Below, piece after piece: positions 3,194 to 58,959 of a stretch of DNA of 64,000 nt. Numbering within the stretch: the stretch's first letter is position 1; each line of letters begins with the position of its first letter. A program made the position numbers and the translations under genes. The notes below the pieces were generated by a model. It saw only the letters and a program-made list of their open reading frames with translations. It did no database searches and was not told the origin of the DNA. This DNA comes from Octopus sinensis. Taxonomy: Eukaryota. The stretch is taken from the NCBI RefSeq assembly GCF_006345805.1, contig NC_042999.1, positions 17,794,001 to 17,858,000 on the forward strand. The letters run 5' to 3'.

Positions 3194-3333
3194 TTAAGGC
3201 GTTGCTGTGTTGTAAGAGAGTTGCTTCCTAACTACATGGTTCCATATTCAGTCGCATTGCGTGGCACCTTGGGTAAGTGTTTTCTACTCAAGCCTTGTAG
3301 ATTTGGTTGCCGGAAACTGGCTAAAGCATGTCG

Positions 3334-3364
<31 letters not shown>

Positions 3365-7454: not shown

Positions 7455-7862
7455 TACTCTTTACTCTTTTACTTGTTTCTGTCATTTGACTGCGGCCATG
7501 CTGGTGCACCGCCTTTAGTCGAGCAAATCGACCCCAGGACTTATTCTTTGTAAGCCCAGTACTTATTATATCGGTCTCTTTTGCCGAACCGCTAGGTGAC
7601 GGGGACGTAAATACACCAGCATCGGTTGTCAAGCAATGCTGGGGGGACAAACACACACAGACACACACAGACACACCTACACATATATACATATATACGA
7701 CAGGCTTCTTTCAGTTTCCGTCTACCAAATCGACTCACAAGGCATTGGTCGGCCCGGAGCTATAGCAGAAGACACTTGCCCAAGATGCCACGCAGTGGGA
7801 CTGAACCCGGAACCATGTGGTTGATTAGCAAGCTACTTAACACACAGCCACTCCTGCGCCTA
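7455..7862 (-). mobile_element. tRNA-derived SINE, family A, full length
   Basis: Reverse complement begins taggcgcaggagtggctgtgt (A-box region), has gttcagtccc (B-box-like) and gtggcatcttgggcaagtgtctt (CORE-like), and ends cagcatggccgcagtcaaatgacagaaacaagtaaaagagtaaagagta. Confidence 0.93.
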
Positions 7863-8729
7863 TACTATATAATAGTTTTTAATCCTAATTTCTCCTATAT
7901 ACATCTAAATACACACATACACACACCGATACATTTTCTTTTGTCATCAAATAAAAAATTATGAGACGTAAGCAATCGTAAATTTAAAGATATAGCCAGT
8001 GGCCTAAACTGGAACACAGTTCCGAAGTCTCATGCCCGTACACGAAATTGTAAACACACATATTCATACAATTAACTTAAATAAACACTTACTATTGAAA
8101 ACCAAAAATGACAGGCTCACATACGCCCCCACATTCTATCGCCACCATACATGTAAACTCATACATTCACCTACTCACTGAAATGATAATATCAACTGCA
8201 GTAACAGACATTTTCAGCCACAGCGGAAGTCTAGTAGTGCGAAATGATGTCATTCATGGAGTGTGAAATAGTAACAAAACATTTCTGACATTCCAAATCA
8301 TTGATGGGTTGCTCAACGGACTATTAACCTTCAACTGTACTCGTTTGAACTTGAAGATGCATAAAATGGTTAATGAATAACTTGTTTCAATAATTAATGG
8401 ATTAATTGATAAATTAATTGATCGGTTATGAATATAAATCAATGTAGAGGGAAATGAAATCGTTCTTATACTTCTAACAGTCGGAACCGATCGTGACTTT
8501 GAAGTCAACATGTTCAAGTTTTAGCGTCTCTCTCTCTCTTCCTTCTTCCTCTCATTTTATCTCTCTCTAAGTGTGTATGTGTGTGTGTGTGCGTACATGG
8601 ACGTAAACAAAACTGATTGCGTGAGAAATTGTAACTGTATCCTTTACTAAGCATAAATAAGGCGAAAAGGAACAGGCTAGAAAAATACATAGCACGTGGA
8701 TAAATATTCTTCTACTACTACTACTATGG

Positions 8730-9731: not shown

Positions 9732-9793
<62 letters not shown>

Positions 9794-9880
9794 TATTAGA
9801 GACAAAACCACTATTTTGCAAAACAAACAAGGAAAGACTTAATCAATACATAAAATTTTAATAAATAGTCAAAAAAACCG

Positions 9881-9926
9881 CCACTACATTGTTTCTTTCT
9901 TGTCTTGATCGACAATCTTCAGGTGG
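9881..9926 (-). ncRNA. type I hammerhead ribozyme, damaged copy (family H1)
   Basis: Minus strand CCAC-CUGAAGA-UUGUC-GAUCAA-GACAA-GAAA-GAAA-CAAUG-UA-GUGG: duplicated GAAA and one base missing from stem III relative to the 10978 copy. Confidence 0.6.
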
Positions 9927-10977
9927 AGTTCCAATCTAAAATATCAATATTTTAAAATATAAAAATAATAATTTTAAAATAATTAAAGTATGAATGAAAA
10001 AATGTAATATATAATCCACATATACCTATATATAATCCATATATAATCAATATATAAACAATATATAAACTAAAATAAACCTATCAACAATTAAATATAA
10101 AATATGAAATATAAAATATAAAATAAAACAAAACAAAAAAATAATAATAATATAATAATAAACTATATATACACCCATACACATATACCTAATTATATAT
10201 AACCATATCTAACTACATACACTATCACACACCTATATATAATCCCTATACATACACATAAAAACGTCTAGGCAACTATAAATAAATAAAATAGCTAAAT
10301 ACTTCAACACAATACTTATTCATACTCCCACACACACACACCATACAACCCACATTCACGCTCTAGAAAACGGACATCACTTAAAATTATGAACGGAGAA
10401 ATGGAATAAATGAATTAAAAATAAAACATTATTGCATTATTTCATTCATAATTTTTAAGTAGTGTTAGTTTTACCAAGTGAATATAATTTTTAATTCCAT
10501 TTATTCCATTTCTCCGTTCATAATTTTAAGTGATGTCTCTAGAGCGTGAATGTGGGTTGTATGTGTGTGTGTGTGGGAGTATGAATAAGTATTGTGTTGA
10601 AGTATTTAGCTATTTTATTTATTTATAGTTGCCTAGACGTTTTTATGTGTATGTATAGGGATATATATATAGGTGTGTGATTTAGTGTATGTAGTTAGAT
10701 ATGGTTATATATAATTAGGTATATGTGTATGGGTGTATATATAGTTTATTATTATATTATTATTTTTTTGTGTTTGTTTTATATTTTATATTTTATATTT
10801 TATATTTTATATTTTATTGTTGATAGGTTTATTTTAGTTTATATATTGTTTATATTTGATTATATATGGATTATATATAGGTTATATATGGATTATATTT
10901 ACATTTTTTCATTCATACTTTAATTATTTTAAAATTATTATTTTTATATTTTAAAATTGATATTTTAGATTGGAAGT

Positions 10978-11020
10978 CCACCTGAAGATTGTCGATGAAG
11001 ACAAGAAACAATTGTAGTGG
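10978..11020 (+). ncRNA. minimal type I hammerhead ribozyme (family H1)
   Basis: CCAC (stem I)-CUGAAGA-UUGUC/GACAA (stem II, loop GAUGAA)-GAAA-palindromic stem III ACAAUUGU-cleavage triplet GUA (cut after 11016)-GUGG (stem I). All core nucleotides are canonical. Confidence 0.85.
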
Positions 11021-12225
11021 CGTTTTTTTGACTATTTATTAAAATTTTATGTATTGATTAAGTCTTTCCTTGTTTGTTTTGCAAATAGTGGTTTTGTCTC
11101 TATAATATTTTATAATATTTTACTATAAATTGGATTTAATCCTAAATCTGATTTTTTCCCTGTAAATTTCGATTTATTCCCTAATATTTATTATATATAT
11201 ATATATATATTTGTCTTGTCTGCAGTGAAATAAAAATGACTATATAAAATATTATGGTCGTATGCATTACTAGTAATATATTTTTCTATGAATGACTTCT
11301 TAAATTTTCTCCAACTACATGTCAAACTCATTAAATAAACTAAAACAGAATTATTAACCAATACCATTTAAAAACTATTGCAGAAATATGTCTTCGAACA
11401 TGTGATCAAATTCTTTCCAGATTTTCTACTATATTATTTCTTTCTTTCTTTTTTATTTTTCGTTTTGTCAGAAATGCTTCTAGGTTTATATCGAATTCAA
11501 TGTGCGAACAAAATCCAATCTTTCTTCAGAAATTGTTGAAGTTGCTAATTAATCAGTGTCCACGAACTGCCTTCAGTTTGGTAGAAATTTCTACTGCCTA
11601 AAGCTACAAACAAACTGAATTAACTTGAACAAGCTTATAGCAATTACACACGTCTTCTTCATTTGCATTATGCCTCCATTAACAACCAATGTCTCAAATA
11701 TTGAGAACTGGGCAGATTGCTTGGTATTGTATTGTACATATGACTATAATTTTATGCAATCAGAATATCAGCAGAAATATCCATAGAAATTTTTGAAAAA
11801 TACTTCATGGCACACTGAACTCTATATACAGTTCGCGATCAATGTATATCATGTGATAAGGAATAATATAACGTCACGAGCAGATCCTTTATCTTTCATG
11901 ATAGAGGAATTTAGACTGAGGCATAGTCTACTCTCTCATACAAATGAACATTCAACGTAGGAATCATAAGTGTGTTCTAAAAACTGAAGATAATGAATGA
12001 AACCAGCATCTGGCTGTCACAGCAGTGTGTGTACCGTTAAGTGATATGGAATACATAAGGAAGGGGTTTCGGATACAAGTAGCCGCAGACAGTTAATTGT
12101 ATTTTAGAAAAGAGAATGTTATGCAGAATACATAGATTAAAGCAAAGAAGATATGGAGTACACCAAATATTTTCAAAATGATAACTATTCAATCGCAAAA
12201 ATCCACAGGGACACATGCACAAAAA

Positions 12226-12376: not shown

Positions 12377-12800
12377 ATAGGTACAGGAGTGTCTGTAGTA
12401 AGTAGCTTTTTTTAAAATGAAGTAGCTTGCTTACCAAACACATGGTTCCGGGTTTATTCCGACTGCGTGGCACCTTGGGAAAGTGTCTTCTACTATAGCC
12501 TCGGGTCGACCAAAGCCTTGTGAGTGGATTTGATACACGGAAACGGAAGAAAGTGCGTTGTATATATGTGTATATATATATATCAGTATGTTTGTGTATA
12601 TGTTTGTGTGTCTGTGCTTGTCCCCCCACCATCGCTTGACAACAGATAGTGGAGTGTTGACGTTCCTGTAACTTAACGGTTCGGCAAATAGGACCGATAG
12701 AATTAGTTCTAGGCTTAGAAAGAATATGTCTTGGGTTCGATTTGTTCGAATGGATGCGATGCTCCGCATGGCGTAGTCAAATGACTGAAACAAGTAAAGC
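12377..12800 (+). mobile_element. tRNA-derived SINE, family A, full length
   Basis: taggtacaggagtg...gtggcaccttgggaaagtgtctt...gcatggcgtagtcaaatgactgaaacaagtaaa, colinear with the 55874 copy. Confidence 0.9.
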
Positions 12801-14779: not shown

Positions 14780-15150
14780 TTGTACTTGTTGCAGTCATTG
14801 GGCTGTCATAAAGCTAGGGCCCTTCTTTGGAAGATTTTACTCGTAGCGTTCGAAAGTTCGAAAACATGATACTTATCTGATCGAGTTCCGTTACCGAACC
14901 GTTAAGTTACGTGGACGTAAACAAACCGATGCTGGTCATGAACAGATGTTGGGGGAGGCAAGCATAAAAATAAAAGCACAAACATAAAGGTCCTCATACA
15001 TAAACACACCAATATACACAACGGGCTTCTTTCAGTTACTGTCTACAATTTGCACTCACAAATCATTAATCGTTCTAGTTCCATCGCTAGAAGAGATTGC
15101 GGAAAGGTACCACGTAGTGGGATTGAACACTCGACCATAAGATTGAGAAT
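14780..15150 (-). mobile_element. SINE family A, old degenerate copy
   Basis: gaaccgttaagttacgtggacgtaaacaaaccgatgc and acgggcttctttcagttactgtctac match the reverse complement of the family A body. Confidence 0.7.
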
Positions 15151-17863: not shown

Positions 17864-18035
17864 ACAGGCGCATGAGTGGCTATGTGGTAAGTAGCTTGCT
17901 TACCAATCACATTGTTCCGGGTTCAGTCCCACTGCGTGGCACGTTCGGCAAGTGTTTTCTACTATAGCCTCGGGCCGACGAAAGCATTGTGAGCGGATTT
18001 CGTAGACGGAATTATGAAAGAAGCCCGTCGTATAT
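17864..18035 (+). mobile_element. SINE family A, 5' half
   Basis: acaggcgcatgagtggctatgtggtaagtagcttgcttacc...gaaagaagcccgtcgtatata, then lost in (TG)n. Confidence 0.88.
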
Positions 18036-18044
18036 ATGTATATA

Positions 18045-18087
<43 letters not shown>

Positions 18088-26301: not shown

Positions 26302-26353
<52 letters not shown>

Positions 26354-26579
26354 TCATAATTAATCAATATAGAGTGGCAAAAAATTTTGTAGAATTTTTG
26401 CCACCAGCGGCCTAGTGGGAAAAAATTAAATAGTCATAGACCATTTTTAAGTTCAACATCACAATCAAGGAACGGCCATAATAGGCCATTCACCCACTAG
26501 AAATAACAGCCAAAGCTTCAACCGCAAAATAATATCAATTCCGTAAGCCAGGAGAAAATTAAAAAACATTTACCCTGTA

Positions 26580-26686
26580 ATTTCTTATACGATGCACCGT
26601 TTCATCTACTGTTTAATGGTAAACTAACCTGATTAAATTAAATCAAGCCAATCTTCCATAGGCCCTTAGAATCATCAGTAAGAAAT
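26580..26686 (-). ncRNA. type I hammerhead ribozyme with extended stem II (family H2)
   Basis: Minus strand AUUUCUUA-CUGAUGA-[68-nt stem II]-GAAA-CGGUGCAUCG-UA-UAAGAAAU; perfect 8-bp stem I, near-palindromic stem III, GUA triplet. Confidence 0.75.
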
Positions 26687-26948
26687 AGCCAAGTCGGAAC
26701 AGATATTTTCACGAGGCATTTCCGCCGATTCCATTACGGAATTAACCAGAAAATTCATAATTAATCAATATTAATCAATATATTGATTAATTATGAATTT
26801 TCTGGTTAATTCCGTAATGGAATCGGCGGCTTATATTTATTTGCTGCCGATAAATTTGGCGCGAGTGCGATAATTTGAAAATTTTAGGTCAGATATTGCC
26901 GAGGCAGGGACGGAAATGCCTCGTGAAAATATCTGTTCCGACTTGGCT

Positions 26949-27055
26949 ATTTCTTACTGATGATTCTAAGGGCCTATGGAAGATTGGCTTGATTTAATTT
27001 AATCAGGTTAGTTTACCATTAAACAGTAGATGAAACGGTGCATCGTATGAGAAAT
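26949..27055 (+). ncRNA. type I hammerhead ribozyme with extended stem II (family H2)
   Basis: AUUUCUUA(26949-56)-CUGAUGA(26957-63)-stem II UUCUA...UAGAU with inner AUUGGCUUGAUU/AAUCAGGUUAGU helix-GAAA(27032-35)-CGGUGCAUCG-UA (cut after 27047)-UGAGAAAU. The stem II closing pair is U-U rather than canonical. Confidence 0.75.
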
Positions 27056-27431
27056 TACAGGGTAAATGTTTTTTAATTTTCTCCTGGTTTACGGAATTGA
27101 TATTATTTTGCGGTTGAAGCTTGGCTGTTATTTCTAGTGGGTGAATGGCCTATTATGGCCGTTCCTTGATTGTGATATATATATATTATATATATATATA
27201 TATTCATAATTAATCAATATAGAGTGGCAAAAAATTTTGTAGAATTTTTTGGCCACCAGCGGCCTAGTGGGAAAAAATTAAATAGTCATAGACCATTTTT
27301 AAGTTCAACATCACAATCAAGGAACGGCCATAATAGGCCATTCACCCACTAGAAATAACAGCCAAAGCTTCAACCGCAAAATAATATCAATTCCGTAAGC
27401 CAGGAGAAAATTAAAAAACATTTACCCTGTA

Positions 27432-27538
27432 ATTTCTTATACGATGCACCGTTTCATCTACTGTTTAATGGTAAACTAACCTGATTAAATTAAATCAAGC
27501 CAATCTTCCATAGGCCCTTAGAATCATCAGTAAGAAAT
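27432..27538 (-). ncRNA. type I hammerhead ribozyme, family H2 (unit 2)
   Basis: Identical to 26580-26686. Confidence 0.75.
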
Positions 27539-27800
27539 AGCCAAGTCGGAACAGATATTTTCACGAGGCATTTCCGCCGATTCCATTACGGAATTAACCA
27601 GAAAATTCATAATTAATCAATATTAATCAATATATTGATTAATTATGAATTTTCTGGTTAATTCCGTAATGGAATCGGCGGCTTATATTTATTTGCTGCC
27701 GATAAATTTGGCGCGAGTGCGATAATTTGAAAATTTTAGGTCAGATATTGCCGAGGCAGGGACGGAAATGCCTCGTGAAAATATCTGTTCCGACTTGGCT

Positions 27801-27907
27801 ATTTCTTACTGATGATTCTAAGGGCCTATGGAAGATTGGCTTGATTTAATTTAATCAGGTTAGTTTACCATTAAACAGTAGATGAAACGGTGCATCGTAT
27901 GAGAAAT
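27801..27907 (+). ncRNA. type I hammerhead ribozyme, family H2 (unit 2)
   Basis: Identical to 26949-27055; predicted cut after 27899. Confidence 0.75.
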
Positions 27908-28448
27908 TACAGGGTAAATGTTTTTTAATTTTCTCCTGGTTTACGGAATTGATATTATTTTGCGGTTGAAGCTTTGGCTGTTATTTCTAGTGGGTGAATG
28001 GCCTATTATGGCCGTTCCTTGATTGTGATATATATATATATATATATTTCTTTTTCTTCAATCTGTCGCATTCTTATCTGTCTCCTATCCTATCTTTTCT
28101 CTTATGAAAGAATATTCCTCCAGCGTTCGCTATCTTACCTCGTCTCGTCTAAGGGACCACCTTGATTGTTTTCGCTTGGTTTGTTGTATGTATCCTCTGT
28201 CCTGGTTTTGTAACCAACTCTGAACCTCCGCAAATCCCAAGCGTTATTTTGGTTCGCGGGGCCAACTGTTCTTTCGAAGCCACATATTGTCATAAATTGC
28301 TCGAAATGTGGTTGTGATAAACACCCGACACCTAATGAAGGATCGTACTCTATGTTACTTTAGTTGTTTTCCATTTGCTTCTCTCGTTGTTCGTATTCCT
28401 AGGTTTGCTTTCGTATATCATGTTCAGGTTTTGGAACATCCTGTACTC

Positions 28449-30225: not shown

Positions 30226-30565
30226 CAGCAGTCATAACGATGGACAACCGCCTTCACCTCTACTGCGGCAAACCTACAGGCCGTCTTCACCTTCCTCGCA
30301 CTGCCGTCATCAATGTGACCTCTACGGCACTTGGGAGCTGCTGCTACCAGGACGAGCACCGGACTATCGAAAATGGCATCGTCTATGGAAATACCCATTT
30401 CTTTGAATGCATTCTTCTGAAAATAGGCCGTTGGCCCCGATATATATAAGTTTTGAAAACGCTCTGCATCGTTAATAGTAATGACAACAACAACAGCAAC
30501 AACAACAACAACAATAATATAATAATAATAATATTAATAATAATAATAATAACAACAACAACAAC

Positions 30566-30706
30566 ATCGAAAAATACCTTAGGAATGAGGACCCAGGTTC
30601 GAAATTTCCCCAAGACACCTGAAGAAGGCTGGAGGGTATATCAGCCGAAACGTTGTGTTAACAACAAACAAGATGAGGACAACTATCCGTTGAATGTAAA
30701 TAATGA
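30566..30706 (+). mobile_element. short HHR-bearing pseudo-LTR-like repeat (family H3)
   Basis: atcgaaaaataccttaggaatgag...aatgtaaataatg, between (AAT/AAC)n and (TA)n; homologous copies at 55378 (-) and 56307 (+). Confidence 0.8.
30613..30660 (+). ncRNA. minimal type I hammerhead ribozyme (family H3)
   Basis: GACAC-CUGAAGA-A-GGCUG/CAGCC (loop GAGGGUAUAU)-GAAA-CG-UU-GUGUU: minimal palindromic stem III (AACGUU), triplet GUU, stem I GACAC/GUGUU. Confidence 0.8.
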
Positions 30707-30718
30707 ATATATATATAT

Positions 30719-30752
<34 letters not shown>

Positions 30753-31160
30753 AAGGAAATGAAGAAAATGCTGACAAAATAATTTAAGTAAGGGAGAGTG
30801 TATTGAATTAGGTGAAAGTTCTTTTTACCGGTTGCGCATTTGTTATGCTTTATCAAAAGATATTTTGAGTGAGATAGAAATAGAGTTCCTTTCTGATTGA
30901 TTTTTTTTCTCTTATCTGATAAGAGAAAAAAATCAATCAGAAAGGAACTCATCTCTATCTCACTCAAAATATCTTTTGATAAGCATAACAAATGCGCAAC
31001 GGTAAAAAGAACTTTCACCTAATTCAATACACTCTCCCTACTTAAATTATTTTGTCAGCATTTTCTTCATTTCCTTGTTTTATATATCACAACTCGTGTT
31101 CCACATCTCCTTTTTTAAATATATATATATATATATATAGATATATATATATATATATAT

Positions 31161-32040
31161 AAAATCCTTAAAATCTTAAAAATGTTTTAGCCCGAAGGCC
31201 GCGGCCATGCTGGGGCACCACCGCTGAATGAGCTACACTAGTTTGTGAATCCACCTCTGATACGTGGCACTTGATCAACAAGGGAGTTCGATGCTGCTGC
31301 CCGCATCCGTGTCTCCTGTCGTGAGGTAGGTTCATCTGGGACACCAACAAGAAGAGATCCAGTTTAGTTTTAAAGAAACCCACATCCACACCATGTAAGT
31401 CTCTCAGGCATTTAGGGAGGATGTTAAAGAGCTGTGGTCCTCTGAAACCCAAGCTGTTGCAGTATCTGGACCTGTATTTTGATGGTGATGTTGGAATCCT
31501 TGGCACCACGCAGCGGCGCCCCGTTCTGCGGTTGGAGTAACTTTGAATGCCAAAGTTTGGGACAAGACCCACCAGGATTTTCCAGATGTATATCACTGCA
31601 TATCTCTCCCGCCTCCGCTCCAGGGAGAAGAGGTTTAATACCTTCAGTCTTTCCCAGTAGCTGACATTTTGTATTGAGACGATTTTCTTTGTGTAGCTTC
31701 TCTGAGTTGCTTCGAGTTCTGCTGTTTGTTTTATATTGTGTGGTGACCAAAGTTGGGAGCAGTAGTCCAAGCGGCTGAGGACAAATGTTTTCCATAGGAC
31801 CATCAGTGTCTCCTTCTCTCTTGTTCTGAAAGTTCGGAGAATCCATCCAGCTAGCCGTCTGCATTTTATCACCAGATTAGCAATATGCATTTGGAAAGAT
31901 GCATCATTGCTCATGTCAATGCCCAGGTCACGCACTGATTTTGACTCAGGGATTGCAATTCTTCCTGGGCCAGTGTATCCAGTCTTCACGTCATTTACCT
32001 TTGTGTGCCAGTAGCGCAGGACATGGAACTTACCTGCATT
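31161..32040 (-). mobile_element. CR1-group (CR1/L2/Crack-like) LINE, 5'-truncated, young
   Basis: Open frame from NAGKFHVLRY through RDLGIDMS..F..HI..LRTFRTR..LWKTFVLSRLDYCSQLWSP..ELEATQRSYTKKI..YWERLKVLNLFSLERRRER..GPQLFNILP is the typical post-RT C-terminal region. It is followed by a 3' UTR with a short-repeat tail (ttttaag)n. Confidence 0.93.
31168..31989 (-). pseudogene. reverse transcriptase C-terminal fragment of the CR1-group LINE (no initiating ORF, no endonuclease)
   Basis: 273-aa ORF in the supplied track; the motifs above; the last about 55 codons probably read into the 3' UTR. Confidence 0.85.
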
Positions 32041-35327: not shown

Positions 35328-35707
35328 GGAGCACTCCGTCGGTTACGACGATGAGGGTCCCAGCTGATACGATCAACGGAACAGCTTGCTCGTGGAATTA
35401 ACATGCAAGTGACTGAGCATTCCACAGACACGTGTACCCTTAACGTAGTTCTCGAGGAGATTCAGCGTGACACAGAGTGTGACAAGGCCGGCCCTTTGAA
35501 ATACAGGTACAACAGAAACAGGAAGGAAGAGTGAGAGAAAGTTGTGGTGAAAGAGTACAGCAGGGTTCACCACCACCCCCTGCAGGAGCCTTGTGAAGCT
35601 TTAGGTGTTTTCGCTCAATAAACACTCACAATGCCCGGTCTGGGAATCGAAACCGCGATCCTACGACCGCGAGTCCGCTGCCCTAACCACTGGGCCATTG
35701 CGCCTCA
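35328..35707 (-). mobile_element. tRNA-derived SINE, family C, full length
   Basis: Reverse complement gaggcgcaatggcccagtggttagggcagcggactcg...cgattcccagacc...gtcgtaaccgacggagtgctcc. Confidence 0.93.
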
Positions 35708-36538
35708 TTTCATACTTACTATGACATACAATGCTCTGGATCTAAAACCTCAAAATATTATAAAAGTTAATGTTCGATAGATATATTACTGGTAAATCAC
35801 ATTCTGCAAGAGGCATTACACAAACTCCGCGTGAATGCCATAAGCAATTTTTATTAAATGAATCATAGAATTCGTTATGTAGTCTAGTCAAAGTATAAAA
35901 ATTGCCAGATGTTCACATTTTGAGAATAATTCGGACAAATAGCCTAATATTTGAGGAGACATATATCTGAAAAATGAATGACTTATCCATATCTTATAGT
36001 GGGTCAGCTTTAATTAAAAATAACTTTCATCCCTGCATATATTTGATGAAACAGAAATATTGTTATATATCGGCCTCAGAGTAAGAACGTGAGTGGAGAT
36101 ATTTGTAGAGGACATCAATGGTCATTACATTATTGTGATCAAAATGAAATTCTATCCCTTAATTGAAATATCAATAACTGTAAATTGTGCATTCAAAGGC
36201 ATTCTTTAAAACCGCATTCCATTATGAACACGCATCATACATTTATTGTGTTCATAACTTACGTAATATTGTGCGATTGAAGCCGGACCCATTTCTAGGG
36301 AAATGGGCCCAAATGGGGGTAATAAATCTTCATATCTTCAATAATAATTAATATACGCATACCTCAAAGTCTATATGGAAGTATCCGGCCAAACCGTATA
36401 GAATTCTGATTTATTACATAATTTTACAGCTCATTTGCGAAAATAAATGATATCGAAAGATAAAAATAAGCAGATGTCTTATAGTACATATGATTGTTAT
36501 TATAGTGTATATGATTTGCACTATATATCTATAAAGTT

Positions 36539-36694
36539 GAGGCGCAATGGTCAAGTGGTTACGGTAGCGGACTCGCGGTCGTAGGATTGCGGTTTCGATT
36601 CCCAGACCAGGCATTGTGAGTGTTTATTGAGCGAAAACACCTACAGCTCCACAAGGCTCCTGCAGGGGGTGGTGGTGAACCCTGCTGTACTCTT
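36539..36694 (+). mobile_element. SINE family C, 5' part
   Basis: gaggcgcaatggtcaagtggttacggtagcgg...gaaccctgctgtactctt. Confidence 0.88.
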
Positions 36695-39769: not shown

Positions 39770-39960
39770 GTATTTAGTTAGAAGTTTACTCCACAACCAC
39801 ATGACTTCGGGTTGGTCCAATTTCGTTGCAAGTTGGGCATATGCTTTCTCCTATAGTCCCGCGCAGATTAATGCCTTCCTGGCTTTTGCATTGAGAAACT
39901 GAAAGAAGCCCGCCATATATGTATATACCTATGTATGTGCGTCTGTGTATTTGTGTTTGG
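39770..39960 (+). mobile_element. SINE family A, old 5' half
   Basis: ccacaaccacatgacttcgggttgg...ttgggcatatgctttctcctatag...gaaactgaaagaagcccgcc. Confidence 0.65.
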
Positions 39961-54032: not shown

Positions 54033-55282
54033 ATCGATCACGGCTAACGTAGTGTTAAAACAGTTTCTCAAATTTATGGGAAAAAAACAGTACCTTTCAA
54101 GTATATGCATTTTCAAATACCATTACATTATCAGCAATAAGGGGGAGAGAGATCCTCAACGGATCTGCTCCCCAGAAATACAATTTCTTTTCAGTCTAAA
54201 ACTACATATAATCAAATTCAATAACTTTTCAAAACTAATAATGATTCAAATTGATCTTCAGACCCAAGAGAGAGAACAAGTTTTTTTATATTATAAATGT
54301 TTACATTTGTCTAGAAACTTTTAGAAGCCTCACTTACAAATAGTATAACATTCTAATGCACATAAATAATTCTGTCTACTTTGCATGTTAGGTCCAGTAT
54401 TACTTATGTGACTTAATTATTGCACAATTGGGCTTAATGTTACAATTTATTTACACATTGTTGTCATTCTGCGATCAGAAAGGCGTATGTAATGTCAAGG
54501 CGGCGAGCTGGCAGAAACGTTAGCACGACGGGCGAAATGCGTAGCCGTATTTCGTCTGTCGTTATATTTCGATTTCAAATTCCACCGAGGTCGACTTTGC
54601 ATTTGATCCTTTCGGATACGCATTGGGGTCGATGTAATCGACTTAATCCATTTGTCTGTCCTTGTTTGTCCCCTCTGTGTGTAGCCCCTTGTGGGTAGTA
54701 AAGAAAAAAATAAAGCATATGTAATGCCGAAGAGTGTAAGAAAGTACTTTTGAATATTTACATTGTTAGACTTCATAAAAAAACGAAATATTTATTTTTC
54801 TAGCATCGGAAATAATTGAATACAGCTATTTAGAAATTACACGTCTCAGATAGAACTAAAGCAGAATCTTTAAATTCTACAAGAGTGTACGCATTTAAAT
54901 TGAATATCATTTACTTAATATTAGAACTACGAATAATTATGTTAGATAAGTAATAGTTACAAAAAAATATGAAATGTCATTCATACTTTATTTAAATTTA
55001 TAATGAAAAGTAAACATTTATAATAAAAAAAATAACTTGTTCTCTCTCTTGGGTCAGAAGATCAATTTGAAACATTATTAGTTTTGAAAAGTTATTGAAT
55101 TAGACTATATGTAGTTTTAGGCTGAAAAGAAGTTGAATTTCTGGGGAGCCGATCCGTAGAGGATCTTTCTCCCGCCTATTGCTGATAATGTAATGACATT
55201 TCAAAATGCATACTTTGAAATGTACTATTTTTTCCCCATAAATTTGGGAAACTGTTTTAACACTACGTCAACCGTGATCGAT
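54033..55282. mobile_element. foldback/MITE-like element with about 270-bp terminal inverted repeats
   Basis: 54033-54304 is the diverged reverse complement of 55010-55282 (atcgatcacgg / ccgtgatcgat; gacccaagagagagaacaag / cttgttctctctcttgggtc); AT-rich non-coding interior with a SINE inserted. Confidence 0.75.
54495..54714 (+). mobile_element. tRNA-derived SINE, family B, with target-site duplication
   Basis: aggcggcgagctggcagaaacgttagc...gtgggtagtaaagaaaaaaa; flanked by gcgtatgtaatg (54483-94) and gcatatgtaatg (54715-26). Confidence 0.92.
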
Positions 55283-55377
55283 GAGATATTTGGTAAAATA
55301 TATTGCAGCATTCACAATAAATTTTCTTTTACTGTTAATATATTTTGTAATACGCCATCTGTATCTTATTTGCATTC

Positions 55378-55501
55378 TTTACATTTGACGGATATTTGTC
55401 CTCATCTTGTTTGCTGTTTCGACTGATACACTCCCCAGCCTTCATTAGGTGTTTTGGGGAAATTCCAAACATGAGTTCTCATTCTTAAGGTAGATTTCGA
55501 T
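55378..55501 (-). mobile_element. family H3 repeat, HHR inactivated
   Basis: Minus strand catcgaaatctacc...aaacac-CUAAUGA-a-ggcug..cagtc-GAAAC-agc: core G5 mutated and stem III/I deleted. Confidence 0.75.
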
Positions 55502-55511
55502 GTTGCTGTTG

Positions 55512-55850: not shown

Positions 55851-55873
55851 AATAATAATAATAATAATAATAA

Positions 55874-56280
55874 TAGGCGCAGGAGTGGCTTTGTGGTAAG
55901 TAGCTTGCTAACCAACCACATGGTTCCGGGTTCAGTCCCACTGCGTGAAATCTTGGGCAAGTGTCTTCTACTACAGCCTCGGGCCGACCAAAGCCTTGTG
56001 AGTGGATTTGGTAGACGGAAACTGAAAGAAGCCTGTCGTATATATATATATGTATGTATGTGTATGTGTTTGTTTGTCTGTGTTTGTACCCCTAGCATTG
56101 CTTGACAACCGATGGTGGTGTGTTTACGTCCCCATCACTTAGCGGTTCGGCAAAAGAGACCGATTGAATAAGTACTAGGCTTACAAAGAATAAGTCCCGG
56201 GGTCGATTTGCTCGGCTAAAGGCGGTGCTCCAGCATGGCCGCAGTCAAATGACTGAAACATGTAAAAGAGTAAAAGAGTA
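55874..56280 (+). mobile_element. tRNA-derived SINE, family A, full length, inserted in (TAA)n
   Basis: taggcgcaggagtggc...ggcggtgctccagcatggccgcagtcaaatgactgaaacatgtaaaagagtaaaagagta. Confidence 0.95.
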
Positions 56281-56306
56281 ATAGTTATAATAATAATAAT
56301 AAAAAC

Positions 56307-56476
56307 ATCGAAAAATACTTTAGGAATGAGAACCAATGTTCGAAATTTCCCCAAGACATCCGATGAAGTTTGGGGGTATATCAGCCGAAACGTTTTGTTA
56401 ACAATAAACAAGATGAGGACAAATATCCGTCAAATGTAAATAATGGACATTATTCCTCATCTCTTTAATATAGAAC
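56307..56476 (+). mobile_element. family H3 repeat, HHR degenerate
   Basis: gacau-CCGAUGA-a-guuug..cagcc-GAAA-CG-UU-uuguu: U4 mutated and stems II/I weakened; otherwise colinear with 30566-30706. Confidence 0.78.
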
Positions 56477-58639: not shown

Positions 58640-58830
58640 TTCTTGTTTCATTTATTTGACTGCGACCATGCTTTAGTCGAACAAACCGACCCCGTTCTTT
58701 GTAAGCCTAGTACTTATTCTATCGATCTATTTTGCTAAGTTATGGGGACGTAAACACACCAAAATAGGTTGTCAAGCGATGGTGGGGCGACAAACACGCA
58801 CACAAACAAACACACATATACATACACACA
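58640..58830 (-). mobile_element. SINE family A, 3' half
   Basis: cttgtttcatttatttgactgcgaccatgc...ggggacgtaaacacacc...ttgtcaagcgatggtgggg. Confidence 0.82.
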
Positions 58831-58959
58831 CACAGACATATATATATATATATATGCATACATAAATACATACATATATAAATTCATGTGCTTGTGTGTG
58901 TGCGTGCGCATGTATGTGTGTGTCTGTATAGTTGACACTACACCGAATACGATGACTAA

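What the first reader, a model, noticed from the sequence alone, without database searches (positions are those of the whole stretch)
26351..28029. Tandem dimer of an about 850-bp self-complementary unit with hammerhead ribozymes in both polarities (viroid-like or retrozyme-like design)
Seen: two near-identical units 850-852 bp apart. Each folds on itself (267-bp outer arms plus a 54-bp inner palindrome arm) and carries the same type I HHR once per strand. Predicted cuts: plus strand after 27047 and 27899; minus strand at 26588 and 27440. Both pairs are 852 nt apart. Established: tandem type I HHRs release unit-length RNAs that circularise in non-LTR retrozymes, and ribozymes in both polarities within a rod-like monomer are the hallmark of viroid-like RNAs. 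Inference: read-through transcription in either direction could give an 852-nt, largely double-stranded monomer or circle. Unlike true viroids, the two ribozymes are one sequence inverted, so the origin is probably Penelope-type inverted integration followed by duplication. The long arms could also trap the ribozyme in duplex and switch it off.
Basis: partly seen in the sequence, partly recalled or inferred. Interest (0 to 1): 0.9.

Follow-up and report, generated by a model that had tools for sequence, protein, structure and literature searches.

The report
Duplicated palindromic hammerhead retroelement insertion
A short mobile-element relic with a hammerhead-ribozyme-like motif sits head-to-head with its own inverted copy in a TA microsatellite of a probable octopod genome and was then duplicated, so the "ribozymes on both strands" come from the inverted copy and not from a viroid-like design.

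Summary
There are two units 852 bp apart, with no substitutions and three 1-base indels between them. Each unit is a near-perfect palindrome (267-nt arms 99% complementary, plus an inner 108-nt palindrome) bounded by (TA)n. A complete type I hammerhead core occurs once per strand per unit, with predicted cuts at 27047 and 27899 (+) and 26588 and 27440 (-).

The motif is non-canonical. It has a U.U mismatch in place of G10.1-C11.1 and a 68-nt helix II, and no Rfam hammerhead model matches it. That negative means little, because two cleaner Penelope-type mini-hammerheads elsewhere in the window also get no Rfam match. A motif this good is expected about 2e-4 times per window by chance.

The window also holds a second palindrome with hammerheads on both strands next to (TA)n (9790-11112) and a dispersed three-copy hammerhead family.

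Best reading: a non-autonomous, Penelope-like or retrozyme-like retroelement with a basic unit of about 400 nt. It was inserted as a head-to-head inverted pair in (TA)n and later duplicated, probably by unequal exchange between the TA tracts. The two-polarity arrangement follows trivially from the inversion. In read-through RNA the antisense arm is made first, so the ribozyme should be locked in a 267-bp duplex.

The viroid-like reading is not supported. I found no relatives, so conservation is untested. Interest is modest.

The parts
26303..26352 (.). Left (TA)n tract, about 25 repeats. It is the target or 3' tail next to the inverted copy of unit 1.
   Evidence: Tandem Repeats Finder; sequence
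26353..26457 (-). 'Head' of unit 1. In the ribozyme-sense orientation it is the 3'-terminal 105 nt of the left (inverted) copy. It contains a 10-bp hairpin (GTGGCAAAAA/TTTTTGCCAC). Its first 19 nt (ATTCATAATTAATCAATAT) recur at the palindrome centre.
   Evidence: family D4; head vs window
26458..26724 (-). Left 267-nt arm of unit 1. It carries the hammerhead-like motif on the minus strand.
26580..26686 (-). Minus-strand type I hammerhead-like motif of unit 1. C3 is at 26678 and H17 at 26588. Position 1.2 is A, so helix I is 8 Watson-Crick pairs.
26722..26829 (.). Inner palindrome, where the 5' ends of the two inverted copies meet head to head. Arms are 50 nt and 100% complementary.
   Evidence: I7. 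The sub-threshold Rfam hits here are generic long-hairpin matches.
26830..26910 (+). 81-nt segment present only in the right-hand copy (an indel between the two inverted copies). It has no other copy in the window apart from unit 2.
26911..27176 (+). Right arm of unit 1. It carries the hammerhead-like motif on the plus strand, and its 3' end abuts (TA)n.
26949..27055 (+). Plus-strand type I hammerhead-like motif of unit 1. Helix I is 26949-56/27048-55. CUGAUGA is at 26957-63. Helix II is 26964-27031. GAAA is at 27032-35. Helix III is 27035-46. The predicted cut is after A27047.
   Evidence: The fold constrained to the hammerhead is -31.0 kcal/mol against an MFE of -34.4.
27177..27204 (.). Middle, interrupted (TA)n tract forming the junction between the two units.
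27205..28029 (.). Unit 2, with the same layout shifted by 852: head 27205-27309, left arm 27310-27576, inner palindrome 27574-27681, 81-nt segment 27682-27762, right arm 27763-28029.
27432..27538 (-). Minus-strand hammerhead-like motif of unit 2 (H17 at 27440).
27801..27907 (+). Plus-strand hammerhead-like motif of unit 2 (cut after 27899).
28030..28049 (.). Right (TA)n tract, about 10 repeats.

Best explanation
The locus is a relic of a small non-autonomous retroelement that carries a type I hammerhead ribozyme. It belongs to the same kind as Penelope-like-element (PLE) terminal repeats and animal non-LTR retrozymes. The host is probably an octopod cephalopod.

The basic element is about 400 nt. 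In ribozyme-sense orientation the left copy runs from the palindrome centre to 26353. It starts and ends with the same 19-mer, so it is about 1.05 units.

Two copies were laid down head to head (5' ends joined at 26775/26776, 3' ends outward) inside a (TA)n microsatellite. This is how PLE-type integration is known to produce inverted 5'-joined copies. It automatically puts the same ribozyme on both strands, 459 bp apart.

Later the whole 852-bp block (inverted pair plus TA tract) was duplicated. The most likely route is unequal exchange or slippage between the flanking TA tracts.

How it behaves, by inference: any read-through transcript makes the antisense arm before the sense ribozyme. The ribozyme is therefore zipped into a 267-bp perfect duplex and should cleave poorly or not at all. 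The likely RNA product is a long hairpin dsRNA, a substrate for Dicer or ADAR, and not an 852-nt circle. Only transcripts that start at the palindrome centre and run outward would give a ribozyme a short time window to act.

Shown: the anatomy, the complete catalytic core, the chance rate, the order of the two duplications and the recurrence of the architecture in the window. Inferred: the retroelement origin, the 400-nt unit, the exchange mechanism and the fate of the RNA.
For: - Complete core and three helices at four mirrored or shifted positions, and nowhere else in the 64 kb.
- Chance rate of 1.8e-4 per window. Helix III plus its loop (ACGGUGCAUCGU) is self-complementary, a hallmark of metazoan and PLE hammerheads that act as dimers (PMC4209133).
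- A U.U mismatch at the base of helix II has an active precedent, axolotl HHR_Amex2 (PMC7229834).
- The hammerhead fold lies within 3.4 kcal/mol of the MFE for the isolated 126 nt.
- The window is enriched in independent Penelope-type mini-hammerheads. Two have a palindromic helix III, against 0.016 expected. One sits on each arm of a second palindrome, 9790-11112, that abuts (TA)n. The other belongs to a three-copy dispersed family.
- PLE literature describes direct or inverted pseudo-LTRs, an inverted 5'-truncated copy next to the 5' end, a (TA)n target bias and hammerheads near the 3' end. Opposite-strand hammerhead pairs 100-700 bp apart are also described.
- Cephalopod genomes carry Penelope elements and hammerhead_1 loci (PMC6962438).
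- The two arms differ by 2 transitions shared by both units, while the units differ by 0 substitutions. The palindrome therefore came first and the tandem copy later.
- A 19-nt exact repeat links the unit start and the centre. The 400-nt monomer folded as a circle gives -110.6 kcal/mol against -83.7 +/- 5.2 for shuffles, z = -5.2, with helix I extended into a rod as in retrozyme RNAs (compare).
- Retrozyme consensus lengths of 51-972 bp are reported.
- In the unit's MFE and centroid folds the ribozyme segment is fully paired with the other arm.
Against: - No relative of the unit was found anywhere I could search. Conservation or covariation of the ribozyme, copy number, and the 400-nt monomer are therefore all untested.
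- No Rfam hammerhead model matches.
- G10.1-C11.1, described as highly conserved in PLE hammerheads, is absent.
- Helix II is 68 nt, far from the usual 4-8 bp, and no loop-loop contacts can be recognised.
- No PLE reverse transcriptase or GIY-YIG gene is in the window. The only RT fragment is LINE-like.
- The right-hand copy lacks the 105-nt 3' segment of the left-hand copy and has an extra 81 nt, which the model does not explain.
- The zero-loop symmetric centre suits snap-back or DNA-level palindrome formation better than two independent truncations.
- TA tracts are very common in this window, so lying next to one is weak evidence.
- A hammerhead-free palindrome flanked by (TA)n (30753-31076) shows that palindromes arise here without ribozymes.
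Confidence: 0.6

Rival explanations
1. The hammerhead-like motif is a chance match. The unit is a foldback or MITE-type DNA transposon, or a locally generated palindrome at a fragile TA microsatellite. No ribozyme ancestry is involved.
For: - No Rfam hammerhead hit at any threshold.
- Non-canonical helix II and no G10.1-C11.1 pair.
- About 8 such motifs are expected by chance per 2.7-Gb genome, so a genome-wide scan would turn some up.
- A hammerhead-free palindrome flanked by (TA)n lies 2.7 kb away at 30753-31076, with arms 96% identical. Other inverted repeats without cores lie at 35551-36694 and 54104-55212.
- The inner palindrome scores only as a generic hairpin against MITE-derived miRNA families.
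Against: - The chance rate for this particular 0.7-kb element is about 2e-6 (derived), before counting the palindromic helix III.
- The window holds two other independent hammerhead-bearing elements, one with the same palindromic architecture.
- The Rfam negative carries little weight, because the clean mini-hammerheads at 30619 and 10982 also fail.
- I saw no target-site duplication, and the unit's left end (the head) is not part of the inverted repeat.
- The 400-nt monomer is significantly structured around the motif.
Confidence: 0.2
2. One reading: a working ambisense retrozyme. Transcripts of either strand are cut at the two hammerheads 852 nt apart. The hairpin-shaped monomer is ligated into a circle and may be copied RNA-to-RNA or reverse-transcribed, in the manner of a viroid or retroviroid.
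For: - Two same-strand ribozyme sites lie exactly one unit apart on each strand.
- Tandem type I hammerheads do release circularising unit-length RNAs in animal retrozymes.
- Repeat lengths up to 972 bp are reported.
- The self-complementary helix III could support dimeric cleavage.
- For a transcript that starts at the centre of unit 1, the three arms R1, L2 and R2 leave one arm unpaired. This is an inference from the anatomy.
Against: - The equilibrium structure buries every ribozyme nucleotide in a perfect duplex of -599 kcal/mol.
- The antisense arm is always transcribed first in read-through RNA.
- The two ribozymes are one sequence inverted, a by-product of the inversion.
- Only two units are present, they have zero substitutions between them, and the junction is a TA tract. 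That pattern fits a recent DNA-level duplication.
- There is no other copy in the window and none in any searchable collection.
- The weak helix II predicts slow cleavage.
Confidence: 0.06
3. The second unit is an assembly artefact, a false tandem duplication created at the TA tracts. The organism has a single palindromic unit. This rival bears only on the dimer and is compatible with any view of the ribozyme.
For: - The units differ only by three 1-base indels in short runs, with no substitution in 823 nt. That is the error profile of long-read consensus.
- The unit is bounded on both sides and at the junction by TA microsatellite, which is hard to assemble.
- PLE-type tandem and inverted insertions are noted to cause assembly problems.
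Against: - The three TA tracts differ in length and in their interruptions.
- Real tandem dimers are common for this class of element.
- Nothing in the sequence itself points to a misjoin.
Confidence: 0.15

Closest known systems
Penelope-like element (PLE) pseudo-LTRs and truncated PLE relics with mini-hammerheads (Cervera & de la Pena 2014, PMC4209133; Craig et al. 2021, PMC8557442)
   Same: - Type I hammerhead near the 3' end of each copy.
- Copies arranged inverted (5' ends joined) and in tandem.
- Insertion in (TA)n.
- Opposite-strand hammerhead pairs a few hundred bp apart.
- Self-complementary helix III, which suggests action as a dimer.
   Different: - No RT or GIY-YIG ORF, so the element is non-autonomous.
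- Helix II is 68 nt with U.U instead of a 6-8 bp stem with G10.1-C11.1 and a bulged base.
- Helix III is a real 4-bp stem.
- The inverted junction is perfectly symmetric.
- I could not show sequence homology to any PLE.
Animal non-LTR retrozymes (Cervera & de la Pena 2020, PMC7229834; Li, Clavereau & Pollet 2026 preprint, 10.64898/2026.07.22.740005)
   Same: - Low-GC tandem repeats, each with a type I hammerhead.
- Predicted unit-length RNA between successive cut sites.
- A highly self-paired monomer.
- The inferred 400-nt basic unit matches mussel retrozymes (350-390 bp). The 852 bp lies within the reported 51-972 bp range.
- The U.U base of helix II matches axolotl HHR_Amex2.
   Different: - Retrozyme monomers carry the ribozyme in one polarity and are imperfect rods. 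Here the 852-bp repeat is an inverted pair with a 99% perfect 267-bp duplex.
- There are only two units.
- The junction is a microsatellite.
- Expression, circles and genomic copy number are unknown.
Viroid-like circular RNAs with hammerheads in both polarities, including the carnation retroviroid-like element that has a DNA form (reviewed in PMC7761336)
   Same: Hammerhead motifs on both strands of a self-complementary unit that also exists as DNA.
   Different: - Those RNAs are 220-400 nt.
- They have two different ribozymes facing each other in a mismatched rod or branched fold that allows transient ribozyme folding.
- They replicate RNA-to-RNA.
- Here one sequence is simply inverted, the duplex is near perfect, and nothing indicates replication.
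Hammerhead-bearing SINE-like and satellite repeats (Schistosoma Sm-alpha, newt satellite 2), as cited in PMC4209133 and PMC7229834
   Same: A short non-coding dispersed or tandem repeat with a type I hammerhead that works best as a dimer.
   Different: Those are high-copy direct repeats with compact, canonical helix II. I found no pol III boxes in this unit.
Foldback elements, palindromic MITEs and hairpin-RNA (endo-siRNA) loci
   Same: A near-perfect long inverted repeat with a short centre, AT-rich flanks, and a transcript predicted to form long dsRNA.
   Different: - A complete hammerhead core lies in each arm.
- The 105-nt non-inverted head is related to the centre.
- No target-site duplication is recognisable.

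Membership tests
Hammerhead ribozyme, type I | Invariant core: C3 U4 G5 A6 N7 G8 A9, G12 A13 A14, A15.1-U16.1, H17 not G | tested here: met
   CUGAUGA ... GAAA ... U-A at all four sites
Hammerhead ribozyme, type I | Three helices around the core, with helix I open-ended | tested here: met
   Helix I is 8 bp (plus a 4-bp extension after an internal loop). Helix II is 4 bp plus a long extension. Helix III is 4 bp plus a tetraloop.
Hammerhead ribozyme, type I | G10.1-C11.1 pair closing helix II | tested here: not met
   U.U at 26964/27031. An active natural precedent with U.U exists, axolotl HHR_Amex2.
Hammerhead ribozyme, type I | Compact helix II (about 4-8 bp) and loop 1/loop 2 tertiary contacts | tested here: not met
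   Helix II is a 68-nt imperfect hairpin and I recognised no conserved loop nucleotides. Mussel retrozyme hammerheads also lack the archetypal contacts.
Hammerhead ribozyme, type I | Match to curated covariance models (Rfam hammerhead families) | tested here: not met
   No hit at gathering score, nor at E<=10 on 2 kb or on 151 nt. Control: the clean mini-hammerheads at 30619 and 10982 also give no hit, so this test has low power here.
Hammerhead ribozyme, type I | Conservation and compensatory changes in relatives | tested here: inconclusive
   No relatives found. The only within-locus change in a helix, A/G at position 1.2, keeps pairing with U2.2. It is a single transition and also neutral for the long hairpin.
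Hammerhead ribozyme, type I | Site-specific self-cleavage | not testable with these tools
   Needs in vitro transcription
Animal non-LTR retrozyme | Two or more head-to-tail repeats, each with a type I hammerhead | tested here: met
   Two units with same-strand sites 852 nt apart. This assumes the assembly is right.
Animal non-LTR retrozyme | Repeat length in the family's range and low GC | tested here: met
   852 bp lies outside the classical 150-450 bp but inside the 51-972 bp of the 2026 survey. GC is about 33%.
Animal non-LTR retrozyme | Multicopy family in the genome, related to PLE pseudo-LTRs | tested here: inconclusive
   No other copy in the window. No eukaryotic genome collection could be searched by DNA, and the six-frame peptide search found nothing.
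Animal non-LTR retrozyme | Expressed as linear and circular unit-length RNA | not testable with these tools
   No transcriptome access
Penelope-like element insertion | Terminal repeats, direct or inverted, carrying a hammerhead; inverted 5'-joined copy; tandem copies | tested here: met
   Head-to-head inverted pair plus tandem repeat, as described
Penelope-like element insertion | RT plus GIY-YIG ORF | tested here: not met
   The longest stop-to-stop frame in the unit is 58 aa. No Pfam hit for the window ORFs tested. The element would be non-autonomous.
Penelope-like element insertion | Microsatellite target, with (TA)n reported for some clades | tested here: met
   TA tracts at all three boundaries. 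This is weak evidence because TA tracts are very frequent in the window.
Penelope-like element insertion | Mini-hammerhead hallmarks: extra base between 9 and 10.1, G10.1-C11.1, palindromic 15.2-16.2 and loop 3 | tested here: inconclusive
   The palindromic helix III and loop are present. The other two hallmarks are replaced by a U.U mismatch (criteria).
Viroid-like / retroviroid-like RNA | Ribozymes in both polarities | tested here: met
   Met formally, but as one sequence inverted
Viroid-like / retroviroid-like RNA | Small (220-400 nt) quasi-rod or branched RNA with mismatches that allow the ribozyme folds | tested here: not met
   852 nt, 267-bp arms with 2-3 mismatches, ribozyme fully paired in the MFE and centroid folds (size range)
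Viroid-like / retroviroid-like RNA | Autonomous or helper-dependent RNA-to-RNA replication | not testable with these tools
   Needs an experiment
Foldback / MITE DNA transposon | Terminal inverted repeats at both ends, flanked by a target-site duplication | tested here: not met
   The inverted repeat stops 105 nt short of the left TA tract. The flanks of the palindrome (..GTTCAAC | ATATAT..) show no duplication beyond a possible AT.

The most novel reading that the evidence does not exclude
The locus encodes a working 'ambisense retrozyme': an animal genomic repeat whose monomer is a near-perfect hairpin with the same hammerhead in both polarities. Either strand would yield an 852-nt (or, from the underlying unit, about 400-nt) self-cleaved circular RNA. 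That would be a DNA-encoded animal counterpart of viroid-like RNAs that replicate by a symmetric rolling circle.
Probability: 0.05. Interest if true: 0.8.

Novelty: new member of a known kind. Interest (0 to 1): 0.35.

Why it matters
If the ribozyme is real, this adds cephalopods to the animals whose genomes hold hammerhead-bearing non-autonomous retroelements. I found no paper in the searchable library describing such elements in cephalopods.

It also shows a hammerhead variant with a very long helix II and a U.U closing mismatch. And it gives a clear example of how Penelope-style inverted integration plus microsatellite exchange can imitate a 'viroid-like' two-polarity design. That last point is useful as a caution for motif-based scans.

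The perfect 267-bp hairpin could matter to the host as a source of dsRNA (siRNAs or ADAR hyper-editing, which is prominent in cephalopods). That is conjecture.

If the strong reading were true (circles from both strands), it would bear on the origin of viroid-like RNAs from retroelements. The present evidence makes this unlikely.

Tried and rejected
1. Rfam at gathering score and at E<=10 (whole window, 2 kb, 151 nt): no hammerhead hit. I ran the clean mini-hammerheads at 30619 and 10982 as controls. They also gave nothing, so I gave the negative little weight.
2. Search for relatives:
   - The metagenome pattern scan gave one hit, L001. It is a GC-rich bacterial contig and a chance match.
   - Three viral-contig scans and one prokaryote genome scan found nothing.
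   - Exact look-ups of the unit's small ORFs and of window ORFs found nothing.
   - A 650-aa concatenate of all six-frame peptides of the unit, searched against 5.8 billion proteins, gave nothing at E<=0.01.
3. Helitron reading: the ends are not 5'-TC...CTRR-3' and there is no A|T host site. Rejected from direct reading.
4. Transib-like or other cut-and-paste reading: the arms begin CACAATC..., but there is no 5-bp or TA target-site duplication. The head breaks the terminal symmetry. Not supported.
5. Sequence link between this unit and the other hammerhead elements of the window, or the neighbouring LINE: blastn at word size 9-11 found none. By eye the 3' ends share only AT-rich similarity.
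6. Pfam on five window ORFs, to look for a PLE or other autonomous partner: no hits. The 273-aa ORF is the C-terminal part of a LINE-type RT protein, judged by its homologues.
7. The bacterial promoter/terminator scanner, tRNA scan and phage/plasmid/E. coli collections are not relevant to a eukaryotic locus. The tRNA scan found nothing.
Full report
**What is there.**
- Two units lie head to tail with a period of 850-853 bp: 26353-27204, and 27205-28029 plus its TA tract. A global alignment of the unit bodies shows 823 of 826 columns identical, no substitution and three 1-base indels.
- Each unit has this layout: a 105-nt 'head'; a 267-nt left arm; a 108-nt inner palindrome (50-nt arms); an 81-nt segment with no partner; a 267-nt right arm that is 99% complementary to the left arm; and a TA tract.
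- The inner palindrome directly continues the left arm. The unit is therefore really one long palindrome centred at 26775/26776, whose right half has 81 extra nucleotides.
- The centre can be read as a zero-loop palindrome (CAATAT|ATTG) with a 10-nt tandem duplication on the left.
- A transcript of one unit folds into an almost uninterrupted hairpin (-599 kcal/mol, z = -49).
- The unit has no other copy in the window.

**The ribozyme-like motif.**
- On the plus strand, helix I is AUUUCUUA/UGAGAAAU (8 bp). It is followed by an internal loop and 4 more pairs.
- The core is complete.
- Helix III is ACGG/UCGU with loop UGCA. The 12-nt segment is therefore self-complementary, the feature that lets metazoan and Penelope-type hammerheads act as dimers.
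- The cut is predicted after GUA at 27047.
- The weak part is helix II. It has a U.U mismatch where G10.1-C11.1 should be, then UCUA/UAGA, then internal loops and a stable 14-bp hairpin, 68 nt in all.
- The fold constrained to the hammerhead is -31.0 kcal/mol against -34.4 for the MFE of the isolated 126 nt.
- A U.U mismatch at the base of helix II is known from axolotl HHR_Amex2. That ribozyme cleaves 22% in an hour and does better as a dimer (PMC7229834).

**Chance.** I planted 300,000 CUGAUGA boxes in first-order Markov sequence with the window's composition.
- Motifs as good as the observed one (helix I >= 8, helix II >= 4 allowing the 1x1 mismatch, helix III >= 4) arise 1.8e-4 times per 64-kb window, or about 8 times per 2.7-Gb genome (a first 30-Mb run gave none).
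- For this 0.7-kb element alone that is about 2e-6.
- A genome-wide scan would therefore meet a few chance cases, but a chance case inside this particular structure is unlikely.

**Rfam.** No hammerhead family matches at gathering score, at E<=10 on 2 kb, or at E<=10 on 151 nt. The only hits are generic long-hairpin matches of the inner palindrome to miRNA families.
- I checked how much this negative means. The window contains two cleaner Penelope-type mini-hammerheads (next paragraph), and they also give no Rfam hammerhead hit at E<=10.
- The library is therefore blind to this class, and the negative is uninformative.

**Context in the same window.** A relaxed mini-hammerhead descriptor gives three more hits. 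Chance expectation is 0.083 per window, and 0.016 if the 15.1-16.1 segment must be a perfect palindrome. Two independent hits meet that stricter condition.
- (a) 10982-11016 (+) reads CCAC CUGAAGA UUGUC-GAUGAA-GACAA GAAA CAAUUG UA|GUGG. A decayed mirror copy lies at 9922-9885 (-). Together they sit near the outer ends of a 1.3-kb palindrome, 9790-11112. Its arms are 95% identical, it has a 66-nt spacer, and it abuts a (TA)n tract. This is the same architecture as one unit of the finding, with an unrelated sequence.
- (b) 30619-30654 (+) reads GACAC CUGAAGA A GGCUG...CAGCC GAAAC GU U|GUGUU. It shows all the published hallmarks of PLE mini-hammerheads: an extra base after A9, G10.1-C11.1, and a palindromic ACGU. 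It ends 54 nt before a TA tract. It belongs to a dispersed family of about 140 nt with two more copies, 56306-56445 (+) and 55373-55502 (-). In those copies the core has decayed to CCGAUGA or CUAAUGA with a deletion.

So this genome carries hammerhead-bearing retroelement families. Palindromic copies with ribozymes on both strands recur.

**Host.** The window is AT-rich (about 33% GC), full of microsatellites and has no tRNA genes. The 273-aa ORF at 31168-31989 (-) is the C-terminal part of a LINE-type reverse-transcriptase protein. Its best named relative is from the octopod Argonauta hians (63% identity; unnamed ENA hits reach 70%). Cephalopod genomes are reported to contain Penelope elements and hundreds of hammerhead_1 loci (giant squid, PMC6962438).

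**What it most likely is.** The literature on Penelope-like elements describes:
- pseudo-LTRs that may be direct or inverted;
- a 5'-truncated inverted copy abutting the 5' end;
- partial tandems;
- extra 'tails' at one end;
- a bias for microsatellite targets, including (TA)n;
- hammerheads near the 3' end (PMC8557442).

Cervera and de la Pena noted pairs of mini-hammerheads 100-700 bp apart on opposite strands in Schistosoma and attributed them to truncated PLEs. Animal non-LTR retrozymes are tandem repeats with type I hammerheads. They are now argued to derive from PLE pseudo-LTRs, with consensus lengths of 51-972 bp.

The locus fits this kind.
- In ribozyme-sense orientation the two copies of each unit are joined by their 5' ends at the palindrome centre.
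- Their 3' ends, 129-234 nt past the cut site, face TA tracts.
- The opposite-strand cut sites are 459 bp apart.

**A hidden 400-nt unit.** The first 19 nt of the unit (ATTCATAATTAATCAATAT, 26353-26371) recur exactly at the palindrome centre (26753-26771) and, inverted, at 26779-26797. I estimate the chance of such a match at about 1e-5.
- Read in sense orientation, the left copy starts and ends with the same 19-mer. It is therefore about 1.05 turns of a 400-nt sequence. A cDNA copied slightly more than once around a circular or multimeric RNA would look like this, which is the model proposed for PLEs and retrozymes.
- The 400-nt monomer folded as a circle is significantly structured: -110.6 kcal/mol against -83.7 +/- 5.2 for dinucleotide shuffles, z = -5.2. 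Helix I of the hammerhead is extended into an imperfect rod.
- The size matches mussel retrozymes of 350-390 nt.
- This point is suggestive only. It rests on one locus.

**Order of events.** The two arms differ by two transitions (26547/27088 and 26586/27049), and both units share these differences. The units themselves show no substitution.
- The palindrome therefore formed first. The 852-bp block was copied much later, or was copied only in the assembly.
- The junction between the units is an interrupted TA tract. Unequal exchange or slippage between the flanking TA tracts would leave exactly that, whereas rolling-circle copying would leave a seamless junction.
- The transition at 27049 changes position 1.2 from A (minus-strand ribozyme) to G (plus-strand ribozyme). 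Both pair with U2.2, but a single transition proves nothing.

**How it would behave.** This section is inference.
- Because the copies are head to head, a read-through transcript of either strand contains the antisense arm before the sense ribozyme. The base of the long hairpin nucleates right next to the ribozyme, so the ribozyme should be zipped into the 267-bp duplex before it can fold.
- Reported cleavage rates for invertebrate retrozyme hammerheads are 0.1-0.8 per minute. That is slow compared with zipping.
- Only transcripts that start at the centre and run outward would leave the first ribozyme free for the few seconds before the next antisense arm is made.
- I therefore expect a hairpin dsRNA, a possible substrate for Dicer or ADAR, and not an 852-nt circle.
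- The two-polarity arrangement follows geometrically from the inversion. It does not resemble viroid-like RNAs, where two different ribozymes face each other in a mismatched rod of 220-400 nt.

**What I could not do.** No collection of eukaryotic genomes could be searched by DNA. The following all found nothing related:
- pattern scans of metagenomes (one chance hit on a bacterial contig), viral contigs and prokaryote genomes;
- exact ORF look-ups;
- a six-frame peptide concatenate searched against 5.8 billion proteins.

Copy number, conservation of the ribozyme, the 400-nt unit, and any link to a particular PLE or LINE partner therefore remain untested. So does the reality of the second unit.

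**Verdict.** This is a new member of a known kind, a hammerhead-bearing non-autonomous retroelement relic, with an unusual long-helix-II ribozyme variant and a duplicated palindromic layout. Interest is modest.

Noticed in passing
window 9790-11112: A second, unrelated 1.3-kb palindrome (arms about 95% identical, 66-nt spacer) abuts a (TA)n tract at 9736-9788. It has a Penelope-type mini-hammerhead near each outer end on opposite strands. The copy at 10982-11016 (+) is intact: CCAC CUGAAGA UUGUC..GACAA GAAA CAAUUG UA|GUGG. The mirror copy at 9922-9885 (-) is decayed. The architecture matches one unit of the finding.
   Followed up: partly
window 30565-30707 (+), 56306-56445 (+), 55373-55502 (-): A dispersed element family of about 140 nt. 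The 30619-30654 copy has a textbook PLE-type mini-hammerhead (extra base after A9, G10.1-C11.1, palindromic ACGU). It also has a B-box-like GGTTCGAAA just upstream, and it ends 54 nt before a TA tract. The other two copies (89% and 78% identical) have mutated cores. The two copies at 55.4 and 56.3 kb lie on opposite strands.
   Followed up: partly
window 30580-30700 and 10940-11060: Rfam 15 gives no hammerhead hit at E<=10 for either of these clean mini-hammerheads. Penelope-type hammerheads appear to be invisible to the library's models.
   Followed up: yes
window 30753-31076: A 324-bp near-perfect palindrome (arms 96% identical, almost no spacer) lies between two (TA)n tracts (30708-30752 and 31120-31162). 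It has no hammerhead core and is MITE- or foldback-like.
   Followed up: partly
window 31168-31989 (-): A 273-aa ORF, the C-terminal part of a LINE-type RT protein. Homologues carry PF00078, and the best named hit is Argonauta hians at 63% identity. Its 3' end has a GCC-UUCG-GGC hairpin and runs into the TA tract at 31120-31162, so TA tracts may also serve as 3' tails or targets for LINEs here.
   Followed up: partly
window 7626-7964, 55873-56108 (-), 17866-18045 (-), 12420-12642 (-), plus weaker copies at 3197-3348, 39794-39959, 15012-15146, 58769-58844: A dispersed repeat of about 240 nt, 70-91% identical between copies. It is probably a SINE-like family and is unrelated to the finding.
   Followed up: no
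window 35551-35707 / 36538-36694 and 54104-54287 / 55029-55212: Two further inverted-repeat pairs (157 nt at 95% and 184 nt at 91%) separated by 0.7-0.8 kb. No hammerhead motif with matching helices was seen in them.
   Followed up: partly
whole window: Very high microsatellite load: some 30 (TA)n tracts, (CA)n, (AAC)n/(AAT)n, and long Ser-, Thr- or Leu-coding trinucleotide runs at 29.9-30.4, 50.3-50.9 and 62.3-63.0 kb. Many of the listed ORFs are translations of these repeats.
   Followed up: no
L001 (Ga0272441_10310692) 831-928: The only metagenome match to CTGATGA-N(55-80)-GAAACGGTGCATCGTA lies in a GC-rich bacterial coding contig. It is a chance hit with no relation to the locus.
   Followed up: yes
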